Source: Euprymna scolopes
Lineage: Eukaryota
Assembly: GCA_053919585.1 (NCBI GenBank)
Contig: CM132788.1
Reading direction: 5' to 3' (one strand)
DNA length: 64,000 nt
A program made the translations under genes and the position numbers. The notes beneath the pieces were generated by a model, which searched no databases, was not told where the DNA came from, and saw only the letters and a list, made by a program, of their open reading frames with translations. Shown here piece after piece: positions 16,381 through 60,510 of this stretch. Within the stretch, counting starts at the first letter, position 1; each line of letters begins with the position of its first letter.

Positions 16381-17524
16381 TCCGTGAAAAGAAATTTATT
16401 AGTAATGATGGGAAATGTTAAAGTTGGTTAACAACGACCAAGAATGTACTGCTACGTAAGATCCACAATGACAGGGTCACCATAAGGCCAATTCTATCCC
16501 TGATTGTCCACCTTTACATTAGCTGGTCAAGTGGTTAGCCGAAATACTTTATTCTGTATTAATAACATTTTCGTATAATTGTAGTGCAGATTCTTTCAGT
16601 TTCGCAGCATCCATGCAAGCGTTATTCGTCAGTGGACTTCATTGTTCATTTGATTTCACATACTAATTTACCAGCATTCGCTTTAATGAAAAAAAAATTA
16701 GGTATGTACTGATATGCTTTATCGCAGCACTATATCGTCTTTTTTTTCCAGAGAATAACTTTCTGAAACATATAGAACTGGACACTAAGTAGGTCAGCTT
16801 TCGCTTGAATAATGTAATATTCCTGCAGGTTAGTGAGATGTTGATGGATAAAAACATATAAATTCGTAACTTTATATAAAATCTTAATTTTCACAAATGA
16901 AATACTGGTAATCATATTGAAAAACAGTTTTCTACTCGTCTTAATGAATCCATATTAAATTGTTCTTTCATAGCTATGAATCCGTAAATCTTAATACACG
17001 TTCATTCCGTTCTTTCTATGCATGTGCACAATTAATAATGAGCTTATTTTATTTGAAAAATGAGGTTTTAATTCGATTTAAATGAACTGTGGATGACAAT
17101 TAATGCATCTTAATTAAAATGCGCGCATCGAAAATGAAAACAATAAATAGGAGATGTTCTTTAGATGCGGCTACTCAATGTGATTATTAAAAAAAAAAGT
17201 GTGACAGATCAGCGAAAATGCGATTTTGCAGAAGATACACAGCCTGATAAGAATATTAAATACTTAAGCTTGAAAGATCAAACAAAAATAATTCAAATTT
17301 AAGCTTGATATAATAATGAAAGTAAAAGTGTGAACGAAACTGTGACAGAGGAATTAAATACAATGTCACGTTTACTGTAATATTTCAAAGCCAGCCAGTC
17401 CACACACCTTCTAACATTTGAACACAATTAATAATGGGACATGTAGAGTCCATTTGTGTAATGAAGTCTATACTATTAATACAATTCTAAATGTTTATTT
17501 ATTTGTTTATTCATGTGTTCGTAT

Positions 17525-31159: not shown

Positions 31160-31900
31160 AGTTTTTACTGGATACTGTTAAAACAACTATCAATAAGAAT
31201 GTTTCCAATTTTGATAAACCCAAAGAGATTATAGTTAATAGATGTCCTGTGTACCTACGTCTACCTTGGCTAGGTAACATCAGTGACCGATTGGCTAAGC
31301 AAATTCCTTTGTCTGTGCAACGGTGTTATTTTGCATCGAACCAACGTATTGTTTTTTTTTTAAACTAGGCCTATGTTACCATCTATTTGCAAAGATCTTC
31401 AGCCCCACAACCATAATAATTCAATTATTTATTTATTTAAATGTAGTTGCAGTGCGCACTATGTTGTGCGAAATTCGCAAAGATTAGGTTTTCGTTTGAA
31501 ACAGCATGTACTTTCAAAGATTCGTTATGCAAATTTTTCACCCTCTGATATTCTGAGTAATACGTATGGTTCTGCGATTTGGGACCATCTGATAAATAAC
31601 CATGCGTGTGCTACGAATTTAAGTGATTACATGTTTACGATCCTTAGAAAGTCGCACTCTCCCTCTCATTTGAACATTTTAGAGACTCTTTTTATTAAGT
31701 CGTTGAGACCTTCTCTTTTCAAGCAAAAGAAAATCTTCTTTAACTTAATTTAGTCTCTATATCATTTTTGTCTCACTTATTTCATTTTGTTTCCTACCCC
31801 CGCCATATTCATGACTTGTTTTTGTTTGTTTTAATCGTATTTTCCCAGATTTAGCTTTGATAAGTAAGGAACAAAACCTGGTTAACTAACCTTTATTTTC
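31160..31900 (+). mobile_element. Penelope-like element 3' fragment (linker + GIY-YIG endonuclease + pLTR tail)
   Basis: RCPVYLRLPWLGNIS, then (frameshift) ORF 31373-31753 IIYLFKCSCSAHYV.R.SQRL..RLKQH...SAIWDHL...LNILETLFIKSLRPSL, a PLE GIY-YIG domain. A hammerhead-like motif follows at 31851-31889. Confidence 0.85.
31851..31889 (+). ncRNA. Degenerate minimal hammerhead ribozyme motif (U3:A8 core; G12 lost)
   Basis: ttagct-TTGATAA-gt-aagga-ac-AAAA-cctgg-TT-aactaa. Stem I is 5/6 bp. It lies in the PLE 3' tail. Confidence 0.5.
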
Positions 31901-32652
31901 ATTTTTTACTTTTTAAATTCATTATGTTTTTNNNNNNNNNNNNNNNNNNNNNNNNNNNNNNNNNNNNNNNNNNNNNNNNNNNNNNNNNNNNNNNNNNNNN
32001 NNNNNNNNNNNNNNNNNNNNNNNNNNNNNNNNNNNNNNNNNNNNNNNNNNNNNNNNNNNNNNNNNNNNNNNNNNNNNNNNNNNNNNNNNNNNNNNNNNNN
32101 NNNNNNNNNNNNNNNNNNNNNNNNNNNNNNNNNNNNNNNNNNNNNNNNNNNNNNNNNNNNNNNNNNNNNNNNNNNNNNNNNNNNNNNNNNNNNNNNNNNN
32201 NNNNNNNNNNNNNNNNNNNNNNNNNNNNNNGTATATGTTAAACAAATTTTGCCTACCAAACCCCTTCTATGGTTTTTGGTCTACAGACACGGAACTTCAT
32301 ATATAAGGTATTTTAAGCAATACAAATATATATTTGGGTTTTAGCTAAGAAAACTCGGTGCAAAAGTGTGAAAATTAGATAAAAATGAAATTTGGCAGGT
32401 AAAGGTCTAACGCAGGCATTACGAATGCATAACGCAGAAACTATTGGTTCATGTTTTAATTTTTAGTCGTGCAGTAAACATGTTTTCATAGCCCAGTCAT
32501 TGCTGGCAGAGGCAAAATAAATCGTTAACTGAACGTGTTGCTTTCGATTCTCGGTGGTGACGCATGAATCTTTTTAAAAATACTTTTTAAATCATTACTC
32601 TGTATTGCATCCAATCTATCTATCTATCTATCTATCTATATATATATATATA

Positions 32653-51907: not shown

Positions 51908-53671
51908 ATGTGTGTATGTATGTGTATATATGTGCATATATATATAAGTAAAAAAAATCTAATAAAAACGTAAGTATAAAATGAAATTACAAAAGAAAAT
52001 GTTGCTATTTATTCCAAAGTTGGTTAAAGAATTAAAATAGTGTTTCGATACCTGTTTCTAAATACCAAGATAACGTTCGCTAGAAAGAATGCATTTATAT
52101 GAAAACTTTTGCGGATTCGTGTACATGGATTATTCTAAATGAGGTGCATACATAAACTATTGCACTTGGAATTATATAACTGAGTCCAAGTGCAAACTTA
52201 ATATTATTTTAATTAGACTAATTTTCTTTAACGATATTTTGTAATGTTTGATATTATTTATTTTACGTGTGGTCTCATGTTTTTATATATGTAAGAAATA
52301 ATTCCGTATACATTTTCATTCATGAATAAAAGATATTTAATGAAAAACATCAGATAAATGATCAACAGATTGTCTTAATTTTAATTACCAGTAATAGATT
52401 CGAGTCATAGACGATAAGAAAAACATGACAGGGTGAAAAGGTAAATGACCGACTTGCTATATCGCCGATTTCTCTCTCGCCTAATTTTTATAGCTTGTAT
52501 ATTTATTCCTGATTAAATTGCATTGTACATTTCCATTAGCTAAATAATTATGTTGCTTGCTGACGCTTAATAATTAATACATTTCAAAATGAATTATTAT
52601 TCTCGGTGACATATGAAAGCAGCAGTTCAGTAGCACTGATTTGTCTGTTCAAAGTCGAAAAACAAAATAGATTTTTAGCATATTTTTTGATTCACATTAT
52701 CTGAAAATGACCCATCTCTTAGAGAAAAAAATATATTTTATATTTTAGGCGATTATTGTCAGGTCAGTATTGGGTTTTAGGACAGTAAACTTGATTTCTC
52801 TGCTGCAATTGTTGAGCTTTTTAATTTTAATTACTTGTATTTATTGACCGTGTTTATTTTTAACTACTTTTTACGACATTACATGAAATTTTCTTATCTT
52901 TCTTGCGAAGACTTTGGGTTTGTGGTAAAAACAAAATCTGAGTAAAATTTCCCTTAAATCTTTTGCCGCTGAATGTTTTCTTTTATTAAATTTATATAAG
53001 TGCATTAAACCCAACTAAATATAAATAATTTTATACATATTACCGCAATCTAAACTTACATTAAAGTGAAAGATGTTAAAAGAGCAGCGCATTGCGTATC
53101 CTGAGTCAATGTCATTACTTAGTTTCTGTAAATATGCACATTTCCTAATTGCTTCTGAGTTATAAATGAAGGACAGGGACAACATAACAGAACCGTTCCC
53201 GACTGTTTATACGCGACCATCATCTTGTTTATATAAAACAAAACTTGCATTACTTCATGCGTAGATATATTTCTAAGAGCTAGGCAAGCACGAATAGAAA
53301 AGGAAAATATTATGGAGTTTATCTAAAAGATAAACATAACGATAAATAGTGTGTCAGATAGCTGTCAATCGGAGTCAGTAGTAAAATAAAAGTTGCACGT
53401 GCTAAAGCATTGCTACATCGGTTAGAAAGTCAGTTAGTTATCTAACACTGCATAGGTAGTAGGTAGGACAAAAATACGTCCAATTAAAAAAAGGTGGATA
53501 GATACGTCCAATAGATTAAAGATAAGAACTTTGTATAAATGAACGCGGTAATGATAATAGATGTATAGTTAGTAAATAATTAGAAAATCTGATAGGGTAG
53601 ATAATTAATGTATTTAATATAATTACTGATGGGAAAATATTATTATAAAATATCAATGTTTATGCAATAAA

Positions 53672-53732
<61 letters not shown>

Positions 53733-54451
53733 CAGTATTATAGCTGGTGAAGCAAAATATAAATATCCTATCTAATTNNNNNNNNNNNNNNNNNNNNNNN
53801 NNNNNNNNNNNNNNNNNNNNNNNNNNNNNNNNNNNNNNNNNNNNNNNNNNNNNNNNNNNNNNNNNNNNNNNNNNNNNNNNNNNNNNNNNNNNNNNNNNNN
53901 NNNNNNNNNNNNNNNNNNNNNNNNNNNNNNNNNNNNNNNNNNNNNNNNNNNNNNNNTATTATTCTTATTACTGGTGGTATACAGGAGACATAACTATCAT
54001 TTTATTTTTATTAGTAATGGGATAAAGGATTAAAACTAGTATCAGTATTATTATTAGTGGGATAAATGAAAAAAACCTTTACGACTAATAGAATAAAGGG
54101 TGATTAACTATGATTATTGCTGATTGAGTATGAGATAACACAAAAGTAGGATTACATGCATTTTACTAATGGCAGAAGGGATAAGTAACCAATATTATCG
54201 TTGATACTAAATGTTACTAGTAGAAAATATATATGCATATTTTAATAACAATCATTACTGATGGAGTAAAAGAAAATAACTATTATTAATATTATTATTA
54301 CTAATTAAGTAAAGGTAAATAATTAATATTTCATATCATAATTAATAATGGGGTAAATGGTAAATATAGTGTTGTTATTTTTATTAGCAATAATGCAGTA
54401 AAGTCATAGTGAATTGCTACAGTAAGAGCGTTTTTAATGACACGTGCTTCA

Positions 54452-54521
<70 letters not shown>

Positions 54522-54544
54522 TTTCTCTTTGAGGGGTAAAAAAA

Positions 54545-57478
54545 TTATATAATGGAATCATTAATGAAAGACTATAATTCCTAATTAAAAATGAGTAAAA
54601 TAAAGTCAATGTTAGAAATAAAGATAACAGGGTGCAGACAAGAAAATAAAAAAAAAGAATGGAGTACTCAACTGACCTGTTTTACCCTCGCTTTTTTTTC
54701 AAAGCTGTATTGAGGGATTTGTTTTTGAGAAAAAAACACGAATGGAAATCGAAAATATGTACAAATAAAATCATGTTCCGTTACGTTATGTATGGGAGGG
54801 AAATGGAGGAAAACGATTGAAATACAGAAACTTTATATTACTCGAAGATCATAGAGATTAATAACGCTCAAACACAAGAGGCATTGTTTCTGCTTAAAAG
54901 GGAAAGATCCTTTCAACTGAACGTGTACAGAATCCAAGATCTTTAAATGAAATAATGAGTGGGCTCGACGTAGGATTGAAAAACATTCGTTTTAAGATCG
55001 CTGCACAAGACGGGGTTTTATATGGTGGTCAGTAATTGAAGACCCGCATGTATTTGGCAATTACGTCTGTTGTTTGCTGTCACATTTTTTACTTTGTTAG
55101 GTACGCGTTTTATACACTTTCATCCGGTCATAATGTTGTTCGACACACGTAGTTGGCACTGCAACTACATTCAAAATTGTAAATTACATTATTATTATGA
55201 TGGGAGGGTAGAACACCTTTTCAAGAGGAGGTTATTTCCGTTATCGTAGAGAAAACGACACGTACATTTGAAGAAAATAACAATTTTGCACTGTAAAGCG
55301 GATTTGCTTTGCAAATTTCTCACTTACTGCCCCCAGTTAAGGCAAACGTCGATATACTGGTCATTTATTAACCATTTGAGTGTTAGTTATAGAAGACTCT
55401 GCTATTTTCATTTGTGTAACTGACCTAATCACATCCAAAGAGTACCCATTTTTGAGAGGATATCAGTAATTATTTTTAATTCCTAATCAATTTTAAATTT
55501 GAGTAGATCATAAGAGTGTTTTATGGTCCAAATTTTAGTTATCTTACGTTTCGGGAGCAAAATGAATCCCTGCGTGTATACAGACCCGTAAATGTAAGTA
55601 TATTGTATGCTGGGGTAATGTAACTGGATGGTGATGTCGTTACTAATACACTGAGGAAAGCTATGGATAATTTAGACTCTCGTGCATAACTATAGTGTAA
55701 CATAGAATATTTTTTTTATTAAGTAAGGAGAAAAAAGTATTTGCATCTATTCGGTTATTGAAGAGGCAAAATGTGTCGTCCACACAGAGAAAAGAGACTA
55801 AATGTTTCATATGGCCAGAGAGTAATTGCTCTTCATCGAAACCCACGAAAATATTTACCATTATCGCGCCCAAAACTGAGTGCATCGACACACCTTCTAT
55901 TTGCCGATAGATTATATCGTTGAAACTGAATTCAACATATGTAGCGGCACATTTCATCAGCTCAACGAATATACTTTCAGAATAGGAGGAGGCTATATCT
56001 GACTACGCTAGAGAAAATCTGTACAGATATCTATCGTCTCTGAAATCAGTAAGTAAACAGGTTGCTAATGCCATAAGAACACACATTTATTAACAAACTT
56101 AGACCTTTCAATAAAGTCTGCAAATTGAAATCAATCTTTCAAGCAGTATTTAATGAAATATTTTGATACCGATTACAAAATACTTAATATCCATTTTGCA
56201 AATTTATGCTGTGATGACCCTGACATAGATAAATGGGCCTTAAGGGAATACCTACTTTTTAGTTTTCGGTAAACCATATAATCTGTGGTGGACCGAATCT
56301 GAGGGTCTAATCTCATTAGCTGTGCTCGATGGAAGTACACCACTCTTAAACCACCTGACTAATTTCTTTTGAAATGTAGTTTCTAAAGAGGTTTTACGAT
56401 CATGAGTTGCGACAGGGCCCATTTTTATATATTTTTCCGTGTCGTTCAATTTGGTAGACGTTTTGTTGAAATAATCATGATACTCTAGTATTAAAAACCC
56501 TGGACCTTTATCTCCTCTAGTAATAACTAACGATTTATTTTTCTATAGAATTTAAATAACTGCATAATGCTCTTTGCGCTATTTCAACTCTGAATAGGAA
56601 ATTAGTGTACTTGCATAGCAATGGGGCAGGTCGTATAATCTTGCTTTTACAACCCTATACTGAAATTTCAGGGCCTGGTGAAAGTTTCTCTGCTTTGACA
56701 TTGAGGATTTCACATTTGAAAATACCCCTTCCCGTTTAACACCATCTAATTGAATACAAAATCTAAATTAGGATCAAGTAGTATTAGTGCAGAGGGAGAT
56801 GAATGATGGGAAGATAGATTTAAGACGCTCTTGCAAATATTGGGTGTGGTTGGATATCCACATTTTTGTATATTAAATGTTGCAATTTACTGTTAAAATT
56901 TAATAACTAGTTTGTTATGACCACTTTCTTTTAAAATTGTAATATACTTTGCGAACCAAATTTTATCAAAGCACGATAAAATTATCACCGTGTCACTCCA
57001 TATTTGTACATATTTCTCTTTATATCTTTCTAAATTTGCCGTTAATTTATCCGTATAATTTTGAATAAAAGTATTTTCAGTTTTGTGTCTTGGGTTTTAC
57101 CTCGCCGTTTTTATTTCAAACAAAATAAACGGAGAACATACATTATTATTTACACAAGAATATAGGAATGTTATATATTCTTGTGTTGATCTTATTTAGC
57201 TTTAAATATGTAGAATAGAGTGTTTTCGCCTATAGATAACATAACGCAACGTGATTTCATTTGTACATATTTCTGATTCCCATTCGTGTTTTTTTTCGCT
57301 CCAAAACCAATCCCTTGATACAGTTTTGATAAAGCGAGGGCGAAACCGGTCAGCTGACTTCCCTATCTTTTTTAATTTTCTTCTCTTCACCCCGTAAACT
57401 TTATTTTAACAGTTGACTTAACTTTAAACATTTTTAATCATGAATTGAAATCTTTCTGTCATGATTGCGTTAAATCTA
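54545..57478 (-). mobile_element. Near full-length decayed Penelope-like element with inverted pseudo-LTRs
   Basis: Minus strand: RLYGLPK (ORF 56252-56449), FSFNDIIYRQIEGVSMHSVLGAIMVNIFVG..CVDDTF (RT, ORF 55661-55957) and NNVIYNFECSCSANYVCRT (GIY-YIG, ~55130-55215). ~54545-54890 and ~57180-57478 are inverted copies of each other. The element is bounded by microsatellites. Confidence 0.88.
57321..57356 (+). ncRNA. Minimal type-I hammerhead ribozyme with U3:A8 core variant, in the inverted pLTR
   Basis: cagtt-TTGATAA-a-gc-gagg-gc-GAAA-ccgg-TC-agctg. 5 bp stem I (one G-U), 2 bp stem II, palindromic ccgg stem III, GUC triplet. A decayed mirror copy is at 54669-54707 (-). Confidence 0.7.
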
Positions 57479-59353
57479 TATACATATACACACATATATA
57501 CACACACACATATACCACTATGTATATATATATAATTAAAAAAACTGCAACATCACTTCAAATTATCGGATATGTAGTCATGTCTAAATGCATTTCATTT
57601 TCTTTTAAACGATTGATAGTTGCTATTTCTTCTGGGTAGTTAAAAGCAGAATAGATTCATTGATATTTATCGGAAGTAGATGCTCGATTTTGTGCTACGA
57701 AACATTTGCTGTCCAAAATTGTGAATGCCAGCATAATTACAGGAAAACATAGTACGATTGTGAACATCATAACATTTGGATTATAAACTTTTGTCGTCAT
57801 GTATTTGTTATACGTTCTGTAATTAAATTGAACTTAGTAAAGTGAACTTAGTGTGTATATAGTGTCTGTTGAATAGGGTATTAAGATGCACTTGATTATT
57901 CAATCGTTAAAACAATATAACTGTTTGAGTTAAATACTGTGTAATAATTAAATGCACGTTAAGGTTATTATGAAAAAAGATAATGTCATATATAGTATTC
58001 ACATGTGAACAGTAAACATAATGTTAATATCCCATATTCAACAAATAAATATAAAACTTAAGGAGGGAATGAAAAACATATTCCTAGTTTAATAGAACAG
58101 GAACGTCGTAGTAACGAAGCTAGATCCGACTGACACCCCAGAATAGCTATGTAGTTGGAAAGAAAGCAACTCATTCTCTTTGGGATTTGGATCAGTGTAG
58201 TTCGTGATATTTCTCATGTTATCTTCACGGAGGCAGTAACAGACACAAATATGCAACATTACAATGCTGCACTACAATAACATATCGGAGTGCATGAATT
58301 ATGCAGGAACACGTGCTTTCTATGATAGTATAAACAATCTATTTCCTGTCACATCATCACTGAAGCTAAAAGACGACGACCACTACCTTGTTTAGTCAAA
58401 ACATTGAACTACTAACTAACCGTGTAGAGCGAAGTAAACTTTAGTAGAAGTAGTTGATTATATGTTGCAAATAGCTTATTTGGTGTTTCAGATGCAAACA
58501 CACCAGTTCCATTATAATATGATATAATGTACTTGTCGAATAAATCTTATTATTTTTCAGATACGAGCTACAATGCTTTACTTTTTATAATACATGACCG
58601 ATCTGACGCCTTTCTTTGTATCAACCGATTTGATGTAATTACGAATCATTTAGAAGGTATAATTCAATAAATCTTCTAAATATGAATAACAATGAGGAAT
58701 TATTAACAATGAAACGATATGTAAATAGATATGTTTAGTGCACATATTTCTAAAGGAGAGCCATATACTTACCAGTTGTCTGTTTGCAAAAATAGCGCTT
58801 ACACTAATTATATTGTAGATCTATGCATGAGGCCGCGAATTCAATAAAGGTAGATTTGTCGAATTCCTTCCAATACTTATTCTATTAACGGTCGCGTAAT
58901 TGCGATGCCACTTTTTGCGAAAATGAACGTTGTCAGCAGTTCAAGTAGTATAACTTTTAGATAAATACATTTGCAACTTCAACCTTCTAACTTATAGATT
59001 GATCTGGAATTTAATTTGTTATGGGAGCATAATCTATGGGAATTTTTTAAAGCCCATGCTGACGACCGGCTCTGGCTTATTCAATTGCTAAGACGATTAT
59101 ATACAGTAAAAGTCGGTGTCGCTTTTTTCGTGCGTCATGGGCAATTACAGTAGCAGATAGACACTTGCGAGTCTGCAATTATACGCTATAATTGCCTGCT
59201 TATTTTTAATACTTCCAAGAGGAGTAATAAACTTAGCGCAGTAATCTATGTAAATTAATCATAACCTAATCGGTAAATGGACACGAGTTGTCATGGTGCA
59301 TCATATACTAGGCACGTAGACATTATATGACAAAATCCAACTAGAAAATTAGG

Positions 59354-59584: not shown

Positions 59585-59736
59585 TTAAATGCGAATTTTT
59601 TTTCTGAAAAGTTTAAAATAGAATTTTACCAGAAGAGCAGAAACGAATAAACGTCTAGATTTTTAAGTTTATTTTTTCGAAATGCTTTCACTCTCTTTCT
59701 ATATCTATGCCTCCTCTCCTCCTGCCTCCTCTGTTA

Positions 59737-59737
<1 letters not shown>

Positions 59738-59809
<72 letters not shown>
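59738..59809. repeat. (TA)n microsatellite
   Basis: Direct reading. Further (TA)n tracts occur near 1598, 12277, 21769, 32805, 33274, 33769, 37521, 43554, 43913, 44536, 51863, 53675, 54455 and 60514. Confidence 0.95.
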
Positions 59810-59810
<1 letters not shown>

Positions 59811-60510
59811 TCTTGGGAAAACGTATAAGAAATGAAATATCATATGTCCACATTGCTGTCTAAACAACTATACGCAAGTTGCTATTAGGTTCGTGCAAAA
59901 ATAATATATATGGTAAAATATCTATCCATGCATATACCTATGTATTAACCTAATTAATAAGTTGCACTATGTTTATTAATTTAATAAAAATTTTCATCAT
60001 ATGTAAGCAACAATGCTCACTGGCGTTTCCTGATAATTCTATTGTCTTTATATTTTGTCTAAACTTACTTCCAATCTGATCCAAAAATAAGAAACATAAA
60101 GTGCAGAGTTTGCATCCCTTTTTTCGGTCAATTATGTGAGGAATTTCTCACCTTAAGATAGAATGTTACATCCGCCGAAGCGTTGTGTAGATTGCAATTA
60201 AGATGAGAACATCTAATAAAACTATATGATTTTTGCGTTAATTTTTCTTCTCGTATTTCTTGTTTCTCTCATAATTCACGCTTATTCTATACATGTTTTA
60301 TTGTTTAATTCTCATATTTACAATTGATTATGCCGTACCCTAGCATAACTCAGTATATTTTCCTAAACATGTCTACCTCCTGCTTATTTAAGAATTATTG
60401 ACTTTTAGTGAATTTAATATTATTTAGAATTAAATGTTAAAGCATTATATTAGACTTACTCAATTTTAACTGACCTTTTCGCTGTATTGATACGAAGCGA
60501 TTTTGCCAAT

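What the first reader, a model, noticed from the sequence alone, without database searches (positions are those of the whole stretch)
57321..57356. Hammerhead ribozyme with a compensated U3:A8 core, apparently fixed in a Penelope-like lineage
Seen: the inverted pLTR carries cagtt-UUGAUAA-a-gc-gagg-gc-GAAA-ccgg-UC-agctg, a complete minimal hammerhead topology whose canonical CUGAUGA reads UUGAUAA. The mirror pLTR (54669-54707, minus) also begins UUGA followed by As, and a separate related PLE tail at 31851 again has UUGAUAA. Known: C3:G8 form a tertiary Watson-Crick pair, and U3:A8 is a rare compensated variant that can remain active; PLE pLTRs carry minimal hammerheads. Inference: the same double change in independent copies suggests an ancestral, selected core variant of this family. 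Standard CUGANGA searches would miss it.
Basis: partly seen in the sequence, partly recalled or inferred. Interest (0 to 1): 0.75.

Follow-up and report, generated by a model that had tools for sequence, protein, structure and literature searches.

The report
Penelope-element hammerhead with U3-A8 core
The motif is a real hammerhead-type ribozyme module in the tail of an old Penelope-like jumping gene. Its unusual U3-A8 core is the founding state of several large families in this cephalopod genome, but this core variant has been published since 2011/2014, and whether it still cuts RNA is untested.

Summary
Observation confirmed. Window 57312-57356 (+) holds a hammerhead-like module with core UUGAUAA, GAAA, the palindrome ACCGGU, a UC cut site and a 5-bp stem I. 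It lies in the inverted tail of a decayed RT + GIY-YIG Penelope-like element.

U3/A8 is the family's founding state, not private decay. Of 317 exact-flank copies, the first 100 read 96 U3/A8, 2+2 single changes and 0 canonical, and no canonical copy exists genome-wide.

This is not new. Natural U3-A8 hammerheads were reported in 2011, and Penelope U3-A8 variants in 2014. This scan already reported the same thing on other DNA of this genome (s1-288505).

What I add:
- **Stem II:** That segment pairs with a strand 3 nt upstream of stem I, with three compensatory pairs between families. This is a pseudoknot of a kind known in other hammerheads.
- **Families:** at least six share the about 50-nt module (3,368 anchored copies) and none has canonical CUGANGA. 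They carry UUGA[U/G]AA, CUGUUGA (A6U) or another box.
- **Phylogeny:** the two main core haplotypes are incongruent with the ORF and flank phylogeny.
- **Rival fold:** a nested non-hammerhead fold fits the covariation equally well.

The parts
57223..57500 (+). Inverted, 5'-truncated tail (pLTR fragment) of a family-F1 Penelope-like element. It carries the module.
   Evidence: It aligns at 82-87% identity to the tails of other F1 copies (L007, L010, L019, L022). A genome search gave 1,688 first-look candidates, of which the 40 scored copies are 78-90% identical.
57312..57317 (+). Upstream strand X (CCCUUG here, CCCUCG in the family). It pairs with 57335-57340.
   Evidence: X and X' are complementary over 6-7 bp in every family, with duplex energy of -6.7 to -9.4 kcal/mol. 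Three pairs show changes on both sides between families.
57318..57320 (+). 3-nt spacer (AUA) between X and stem I.
   Evidence: The spacer is AU plus 0-1 nt in all families.
57321..57325 (+). Stem I, 5' strand (CAGUU here, CAGCU in the family).
   Evidence: It pairs with 57352-57356. The outer pair covaries between families as C-G, U-A and U-G.
57326..57332 (+). Core box, positions 3-9: UUGAUAA (U3, A8).
   Evidence: Of the first 100 exact-flank copies listed, 96 read this way, and none of the 317 is canonical.
57333..57333 (+). Extra A between A9 and G10.1.
   Evidence: It is the majority state in F1. An extra nucleotide at this place is a stated hallmark of Penelope hammerheads (PMC4209133). 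It is absent in families F2-F5.
57334..57341 (+). G10.1, loop II / strand X' (CGAGGG) and C11.1.
   Evidence: G and C are invariant in all 12 aligned rows. The 6-7 nt between them pair with X.
57342..57351 (+). GAAA box, CCGG, U16.1 and C17. ACCGGU is a 6-nt palindrome (dimer-type helix III). The predicted cut is after 57351.
   Evidence: CGAAACC is invariant across families. A palindromic 15.2-16.2 is a hallmark of Penelope hammerheads (PMC4209133).
57352..57356 (+). Stem I, 3' strand (AGCUG).
54456..56284 (-). Decayed body of the F1 element: RT and GIY-YIG remnants plus its own tail.
   Evidence: It is about 80% identical in DNA to L019 and L007. tblastn with an RT piece and a GIY-YIG piece from intact-ish copies hits 56298-55307 and 55277-54854. 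Pfam gives RVT_1 (above its cut-off) and GIY-YIG (weak, just below its cut-off) on the F2 copy L065, which shares about 51% amino-acid identity with F1 over this region.
54669..54716 (-). Mirror copy of the module, dead.
   Evidence: The core box is expanded to an A-run, C11.1 is U, G12 is A, and CCGG has become CAGG.
31842..31888 (+). Module of a different family (F3), following a GIY-YIG remnant at 31340-31747. It has UUGAUAA but is decayed.
   Evidence: The F3 majority keeps GAAA and AGCUA, while this copy has G12>A and other private changes.

Best explanation
The motif is the ribozyme module of an old family (F1) of canonical, C-terminal-endonuclease Penelope-like retrotransposons. It lies about 150 nt downstream of the ORF stop, in the tail that forms pseudo-LTRs.

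Shown:
- The founder of F1, and of the related families F1b, F5 and F3, already had U3 and A8.
- The roughly 50-nt module is the only conserved island in otherwise unalignable tails.
- The stretch between A9 and G12 pairs with a strand 3 nt upstream of stem I, not with itself.

Inferred: the RNA folds as a type I hammerhead. Its stem II is reduced to G10.1-C11.1. Its loop II forms a 6-7-bp pseudoknot with the 5' tail, which holds stems I and II side by side. Its helix III forms only when two copies pair through ACCGGU. It would then cut after C57351, probably slowly and perhaps only with the element's protein, as in other Penelope hammerheads. The U3-A8 pair replaces the C3-G8 tertiary pair isosterically.
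For: - **Family state:** (96 of the first 100 listed copies are U3/A8, and no canonical copy exists among the 317).
- **Other U3/A8 families:**. Among them only position 7, the free N of CUGANGA, varies (U or G).
- **Element identity:**
- **Conservation island:**. Module identity between families is 0.71-0.93. The 35-nt upstream flanks (0.49-0.63) sit near the shuffle baseline of 0.52, and so do the downstream flanks of unrelated family pairs (0.45-0.62). Downstream flanks of related families reach 0.71-0.89.
- **Pair counts:**. 96.4% of cells are paired and 5 pairs change on both sides, 3 of them in the pseudoknot, against at most 50% paired when partners are slid.
- **Unpaired invariants:** U4, G5, A9, G12-A14, A15.1, U16.1 and H17 (never G) are invariant and are predicted only by the hammerhead reading.
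- **Literature:** U3-A8 is natural and active in vitro, pseudoknots link stems I and II in about 40% of hammerheads, and stem II can be 1-2 bp (PMC3088659). Penelope hammerheads have an extra nucleotide at 9/10.1, G10.1-C11.1 and a palindromic helix III (PMC4209133). One such hammerhead is protein-assisted (PMC11167929).
Against: - No cleavage data exist.
- Rfam hammerhead models give no hit at E<=10, even on copies with a private canonical core.
- The most abundant sister families, F2 and F4, carry U at the normally invariant A6. F6 has a box that cannot form the U-turn. Catalysis is therefore not uniformly conserved in this group.
- A nested fold scores the same on pair counts: the X:X' stem, an inner hairpin that uses the 3-8 pair, and a 3' hairpin that uses H17.
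- Folding energies are not better than shuffles, with z from +0.4 to -1.9.
- Published Penelope hammerheads cut poorly in vitro, and in one element cleavage was not needed for insertion in vitro (PMC4209133, PMC11167929).
Confidence: 0.5

Rival explanations
1. The module descends from a hammerhead but no longer cuts. It is kept as a structured RNA, for example as a binding or dimerisation site for the element's RT/endonuclease, folding as the X:X' stem with an inner hairpin plus a 3' hairpin. The core box is then free to drift within what those hairpins allow, and U3-A8 is simply a base pair of the inner hairpin.
For: - The nested fold is 95.8% paired, with 5 pairs changed on both sides, and RNAfold chooses X:X' in all five copies tested.
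- No family has canonical CUGANGA (0 of 100 sampled).
- A6U families are the most numerous, about 51 of 100 sampled.
- F6 lacks the U-turn.
- Hammerhead mutants did not affect insertion of a Penelope element in vitro (PMC11167929).
- Naiad elements thrive without canonical hammerheads (PMC8557442).
Against: - It does not explain why the unpaired positions U4, G5, A9, CGAAAC and U16.1 are invariant, or why H17 is never G, while the upstream flanks and the downstream flanks of unrelated family pairs have randomised.
- It does not explain why, among the U3/A8 families, only N7 varies.
- It does not explain why the 15.1-16.1 stretch stays palindromic.
Confidence: 0.35
2. The module is an active ribozyme, and the nested fold is its regulated 'off' conformer. 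In this view the 3-8 pair and the H17-1.5 pair are constrained in both conformers, and cleavage happens only in dimers or on protein binding.
For: Both structures are equally supported by covariation. Viroid and satellite hammerheads use alternative folds and dimers to control cleavage (PMC4209133, background section).
Against: This is purely inferential, with no structure probing or kinetics. It shares all the weaknesses of the best explanation.
Confidence: 0.1
3. UUGAUAA is the neutral decay product of a canonical CUGAUGA consensus, through independent C>T and G>A changes in individual copies.
For: Both changes are transitions, and the window copies are old, with F1 pairwise identity of about 85%.
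Against: - Of the first 100 exact-flank F1 copies listed, 96 share both changes and only 2+2 have one canonical base.
- The canonical double state occurs 0 times among the 317.
- The F3, F5 and F1b majorities also have U3/A8.
Confidence: 0.02

Closest known systems
Minimal hammerheads of Penelope-like elements, including the U3-A8 variant of Schistosoma mansoni Cercyon (Cervera & de la Pena 2014, PMC4209133)
   Same: - It sits in the pseudo-LTR of an RT + GIY-YIG element.
- It is type I with an open stem I of 4-6 bp.
- It has G10.1-C11.1, and an extra nucleotide between 9 and 10.1 in F1.
- It has a 1-bp helix III with a palindromic loop, which implies a dimer.
- It has U3-A8 in place of C3-G8, in thousands of copies.
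   Different: - Published motifs have a long hairpin helix II (6-8 bp) and no recognised stem I/II contact. Here helix II is at most 1-2 bp, and its loop pairs with an upstream strand.
- Here no family keeps the canonical box.
Pseudoknot-stabilised hammerheads with short stem II, and natural U3-A8 covariation (Perreault et al. 2011, PMC3088659)
   Same: - Watson-Crick pairing occurs between loop II and sequence beyond stem I.
- Stem II is 1-2 bp.
- U3-A8 is a tolerated natural core variant.
- A change at position 6 (A6C) gives low but detectable activity.
   Different: - Those examples are mostly bacterial or phage, or intronic, with a stable helix III that acts as a monomer.
- Here helix III is dimer-type and the context is a retrotransposon tail.
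- A6U as a family-wide state is not reported in the papers read here.
Poseidon element PAc hammerhead of Anolis (PMC11167929)
   Same: It is a Penelope-clade hammerhead. The dependence of cleavage on the C3-G8 pair was shown by single and double mutants.
   Different: - PAc has the canonical C3-G8 and overlaps the ORF start.
- It cuts only with the element's protein, and cleavage was dispensable for insertion in vitro.
- Nothing of this kind has been tested for the present module.

Membership tests
Hammerhead ribozyme (type I) | Core box C3-U4-G5-A6-N7-G8-A9, allowing the isosteric U3-A8 exchange | tested here: met
   UUGAUAA lies at 57326-57332. It is the majority state in families F1 and F3, and F1b and F5 carry UUGAGAA. 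Sister families F2 and F4 (CUGUUGA) and F6 do not meet this feature.
Hammerhead ribozyme (type I) | G12-A13-A14 plus the A15.1-U16.1 pair and a non-G nucleotide at position 17 | tested here: met
   GAAA lies at 57342-57345, U57350 is position 16.1 and C57351 is position 17. These are invariant in 12 aligned rows, with H17 = C or U.
Hammerhead ribozyme (type I) | Stem I flanking the core and the cut site | tested here: met
   There are 5 bp, one of them a G-U in this copy. The outer pair covaries (C-G, U-A, U-G). The same 3' nucleotides can also pair in a rival hairpin.
Hammerhead ribozyme (type I) | Stem II closed by G10.1-C11.1 | tested here: inconclusive
   G and C are invariant, but only 6-7 nt lie between them, and a second base pair is possible in only some families (F1 and F3). 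The segment pairs instead with an upstream strand. Stem II of 1-2 bp with a pseudoknot is documented elsewhere (PMC3088659).
Hammerhead ribozyme (type I) | Site-specific self-cleavage giving 5'-OH and 2',3'-cyclic phosphate | not testable with these tools
Hammerhead ribozyme (type I) | Match to the Rfam hammerhead covariance models | tested here: not met
   There was no hit at gathering score in the window. There was none at E<=10 around the motif, and none in seven family copies, two of them with a private canonical core. The models expect hairpin stems II and III.
Penelope-like element min-hammerhead (Cervera & de la Pena 2014) | Location in the pseudo-LTR or tail of an RT + GIY-YIG element | tested here: met
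   The module lies about 150 nt after the ORF stop in F1 and F2 copies.
Penelope-like element min-hammerhead (Cervera & de la Pena 2014) | Palindromic 15.2-16.2 / loop 3, implying an active dimer | tested here: met
   ACCGGU in F1, F2, F5 and F6. F3 and F4 have ACCUGGU, which has a central U-U.
Penelope-like element min-hammerhead (Cervera & de la Pena 2014) | [quoted passage not shown] | tested here: met
   A57333. It is present in F1 and F1b and absent in F2-F5.
Penelope-like element min-hammerhead (Cervera & de la Pena 2014) | Long hairpin helix II (6-8 bp) without a stem I/II tertiary contact | tested here: not met
   Only 8-9 nt lie between the core box and G12. An upstream strand is complementary to them, with three compensatory pairs.

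The most novel reading that the evidence does not exclude
A whole clade of cephalopod Penelope-like elements, with at least six families and thousands of copies, carries a pseudoknotted hammerhead-type module in which the canonical CUGANGA box has been replaced everywhere. Two alternative three-site core haplotypes occur: U3-A6-A8 and C3-U6-G8. They are incongruent with the ORF and tail phylogeny. Either each was fixed at least twice, or a tract of 15 nt or less moves between lineages. Either the active sequence space of pseudoknot- or protein-assisted hammerheads is wider than thought (A6U included), or a dead ribozyme has been taken over as a structural RNA for retrotransposition.
Probability: 0.3. 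Interest if true: 0.55.

Novelty: new member of a known kind. Interest (0 to 1): 0.33.

Why it matters

The wider pattern could matter more. This genome offers thousands of natural copies of a hammerhead-type module in a few discrete core states: U3-A8 with N7 = U or G, A6U, and a box without the U-turn. All share the same pseudoknot, stem I and dimer-type helix III.

That is a ready-made natural mutant series. It could test how far the hammerhead core tolerates change when a pseudoknot and an element-encoded protein assist folding. It could also test whether Penelope-like elements need cleavage at all.

Tried and rejected
- **Rfam scans** found no hammerhead hit at any threshold, even in copies with a private canonical core. 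Absence of a hit therefore says nothing about the core.
The second pair is impossible in F2, F4 and F5.
- **A canonical sister family** looked possible at first (CUGAUGA copies such as L031 and L104). These turned out to be private T>A changes inside families whose majority is CUGUUGA.
- **Thermodynamics** gave z-scores from +0.4 to -1.9, which is uninformative. The fold is pseudoknotted, so nested predictions cannot show it.
- **Cross-species comparison through proteins** gave one hit only, an 804-nt ENA metagenome contig. No other cephalopod genome was reachable.
- **A permuted ('split stem II') hammerhead reading**, in the sense of PMC10085705, was considered. I dropped it in favour of the simpler and already documented loop II pseudoknot.
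- **No full-length consensus** of the element was built. Only majority states of short tail stretches were compared.
Full report
**The observation**

The predicted scissile bond is between C57351 and A57352.

The mirror copy lies at 54716-54669 (-) and a third copy at 31842-31888 (+). Both are damaged at G12. The mirror copy also has a broken palindrome and an A-run in the core box.

Rfam finds no hammerhead in the window at gathering score, and none at E<=10 around the motif.

**Context**

- The stretch 56284-54456 (-) is a decayed Penelope-like element.
  - It is about 80% identical in DNA to other copies of the same family.
  - tblastn places reverse-transcriptase and GIY-YIG remnants at 56298-54854.
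  - Better-preserved copies of the sister family F2 (about 51% amino-acid identity to F1 here) give Pfam RVT_1 above its cut-off, followed by a weak GIY-YIG match just below its cut-off.
  - The endonuclease is C-terminal, so this is a canonical EN+ element, not a Naiad.
- The module-bearing piece at 57223-57500 (+) is only the tail of the element, inverted against the 5' side of the body. This is the usual Penelope arrangement (PMC8557442).
- (TA)n microsatellites flank the insertion.
- In intact-ish copies the module lies about 150 nt after the ORF stop.

**Is U3/A8 private decay or the family state?**

A genome search with the tail gave 1,688 first-look candidates. In 33 aligned copies the majority reads UUGAUAA.

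The pattern Y-UGAU-R-A followed by the exact 3' half has 317 genomic hits and no reversed-control hits. The first 100 listed are 96 U3/A8, 2 U3/G8, 2 C3/A8 and 0 C3/G8.

A separate pattern that would have caught the canonical double state found none among all its hits. U3/A8 was the founder's state.

The window copy differs from the family majority in the module only by two C>T changes that keep wobble pairs. F1 is old, with mean pairwise identity of about 85%.

**Other families**

An anchor pattern for the module, with the core left free, has 3,368 exact hits and no controls. The first 100 hits, together with targeted retrievals, resolve at least six families:

| Family | Core box | Share of the first 100 hits |
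|---|---|---|
| F1 | UUGAUAA + A | 10 |
| F1b | UUGAGAA + A | 4 |
| F5 | UUGAGAA | 21 |
| F3 | UUGAUAA | 9 |
| F2 | CUGUUGA | 34 |
| F4 | CUGUUGA | 17 |
| F6 / other | F6: a box of the form YAYGAAAA | 5 |

None of the 100 has CUGANGA. The few canonical copies found earlier, such as L031 and L104, are private T>A changes inside F2 and F4.

Among the four U3/A8 families the only core position that varies is N7. This is the one free position of the hammerhead consensus.

**A conserved island**

Between families, the 35-nt upstream flanks of the module (0.49-0.63) are close to shuffled sequence (baseline 0.52), as are the downstream flanks of unrelated family pairs (0.45-0.62). Downstream flanks of related families are still alignable, at 0.71-0.89. 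The module itself is 0.71-0.93 identical. The module has therefore been under purifying selection in the lineages that founded these families.

Only 8-9 nt separate the core box from G12. A second base pair inside that stretch is possible in F1 and F3 but not in F2, F4 or F5.

Instead, the 6-7 nt between G10.1 and C11.1 are complementary to a strand that ends 2-3 nt upstream of stem I:

| Families | Upstream strand X | Partner X' |
|---|---|---|
| F1, F5, F6 | CCCUCG | CGAGGG (UGAGGG in F6) |
| F2 | AAGCUCG | CGAGCUU |
| F3, F4 | UUCCUCG | YGAGGAA |

On a 12-row alignment of F5, F2, F3 and F4 I counted pairs for a structure with this pseudoknot, stem I, the 3-8 pair, G10.1-C11.1 and A15.1-U16.1.

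- 96.4% of cells are paired.
- Five pairs change on both sides: three in the pseudoknot, one in stem I, and the 3-8 pair.
- When partners are slid, no more than 50% of cells pair.

The rows are copies of four families, so the independent events are few.

Pseudoknots between loop II and sequence beyond stem I, and stems II of one or two pairs, are documented for about 40% of hammerheads and are needed for fast cleavage (PMC3088659). The feature is therefore known in the class. However, it is not part of the published description of Penelope hammerheads, which have long hairpin helices II and no stem I/II contact (PMC4209133).

**A rival fold fits equally well**

A fully nested structure scores 95.8% paired, with five pairs changed on both sides. 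It consists of:

- the X:X' stem;
- an inner hairpin made of the 3' half of stem I's 5' strand, with positions 3/8, A9, G10.1 and the first X' nucleotide;
- a 3' hairpin that pairs H17 with position 1.5.

RNAfold also chooses X:X' in all five copies folded, with unremarkable z-scores.

The C3-G8 to U3-A8 exchange therefore cannot be assigned uniquely to the hammerhead's tertiary pair. What the nested fold does not explain is the invariance of the unpaired positions U4, G5, A9, CGAAAC and U16.1, and the absence of G at position 17. These are exactly the hammerhead's catalytic positions.

**Incongruent core haplotypes**

A maximum-likelihood tree was built from the roughly 460 nt that encode the endonuclease just upstream of the tail, using 20 copies. 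It groups (F5,F1) against (F2,(F3,F4)), with support of 100/100 and 100/99.

- The tail flanks give the same grouping.
- The core haplotype needs two changes on this tree, and no bootstrap tree allows one. The haplotypes are U3-A6-A8 in F1, F5 and F3, and C3-U6-G8 in F2 and F4.
- Between F3 and F4, the only fixed differences within about 100 nt around the module are positions 3, 6 and 8 and the first X' nucleotide.

Either the same multi-site state was fixed twice, or a very short tract was exchanged between lineages. I cannot tell which. Either way the core box is not drifting freely.

**What is known**

- Natural U3-A8 covariation in hammerheads, and its activity in vitro, were reported in 2011 (PMC3088659).
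- A U3-A8 variant with about 1,300 copies in a Penelope-like element of Schistosoma mansoni was reported in 2014. So were the extra nucleotide at 9/10.1, G10.1-C11.1 and the palindromic helix III (PMC4209133).
- Penelope hammerheads cut poorly in vitro (PMC4209133).
- In the Anolis element PAc the ribozyme needs the element's protein, and cleavage is dispensable for insertion in vitro (PMC11167929).
- This scan has already reported a U3-A8 Penelope hammerhead on other DNA of this same genome, with the same conclusion (s1-288505, seen).

**Verdict**

The claims that it is selected and active remain open, and the headline is not new.

- I rate the module as a pseudoknotted, dimer-type hammerhead that may still cut weakly at 0.5.
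- I rate a dead ribozyme kept as structural RNA at 0.35.
- I rate an active ribozyme whose nested fold is a regulated 'off' conformer at 0.1.
- I rate neutral decay at 0.02.

RNA-end evidence could not be obtained.

Noticed in passing
Genome-wide; examples L058:1566-1620:- (F2) and L113:74-128:- (F4): The two most numerous sister families carry CUGUUGA, with U at the normally invariant A6. Otherwise they have the same pseudoknot, stem I, GAAA and dimer-type helix III.
   Followed up: yes
L085:40-94:- (F3) versus L113:74-128:- (F4): F3 and F4 are sister subfamilies. Their only fixed differences within about 100 nt around the module are core positions 3, 6 and 8 and the first loop II nucleotide. 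The core haplotype is also incongruent with the endonuclease tree.
   Followed up: partly
Rfam gives no hit at gathering score in the window. I did not analyse it further.
   Followed up: no
L043-L052; G000:C8:10432194-10435515: Canonical Hammerhead_1 motifs, well above the Rfam cut-off, sit next to tRNA-like sequence. One array repeats about every 410 bp, which is retrozyme or SINE-like. The first look gave some 900,000 loose candidates (a rough count), of which only 74 were scored and 73 passed.
   Followed up: partly
L153:600-680 (+), ENA metagenome contig: This 804-nt metagenome contig encodes a GIY-YIG fragment 60% identical to F2's. It is followed by a decayed CUGUUGA module with yet another compensated pseudoknot pair (AUCCUCG with CGAGGAU) and a different palindrome (ACUAGU).
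   Followed up: partly
window 16505-16846 (+): This is a further reverse-transcriptase-like stretch, 36% identical to the F2 RT piece by tblastn. It is probably another retroelement remnant.
   Followed up: no
window 53658-53737, 54455-54524, 57462-57540, 59736-59813: (TA)n and (TA/CA)n microsatellites bracket the Penelope insertion. This fits the reported insertion bias of these elements for such repeats.
   Followed up: no
window 31933 onward; within 53747-54025: Runs of N (assembly gaps or masking) cut the F3 tail at 31933 and interrupt the region left of the F1 element. They were left untouched.
   Followed up: no
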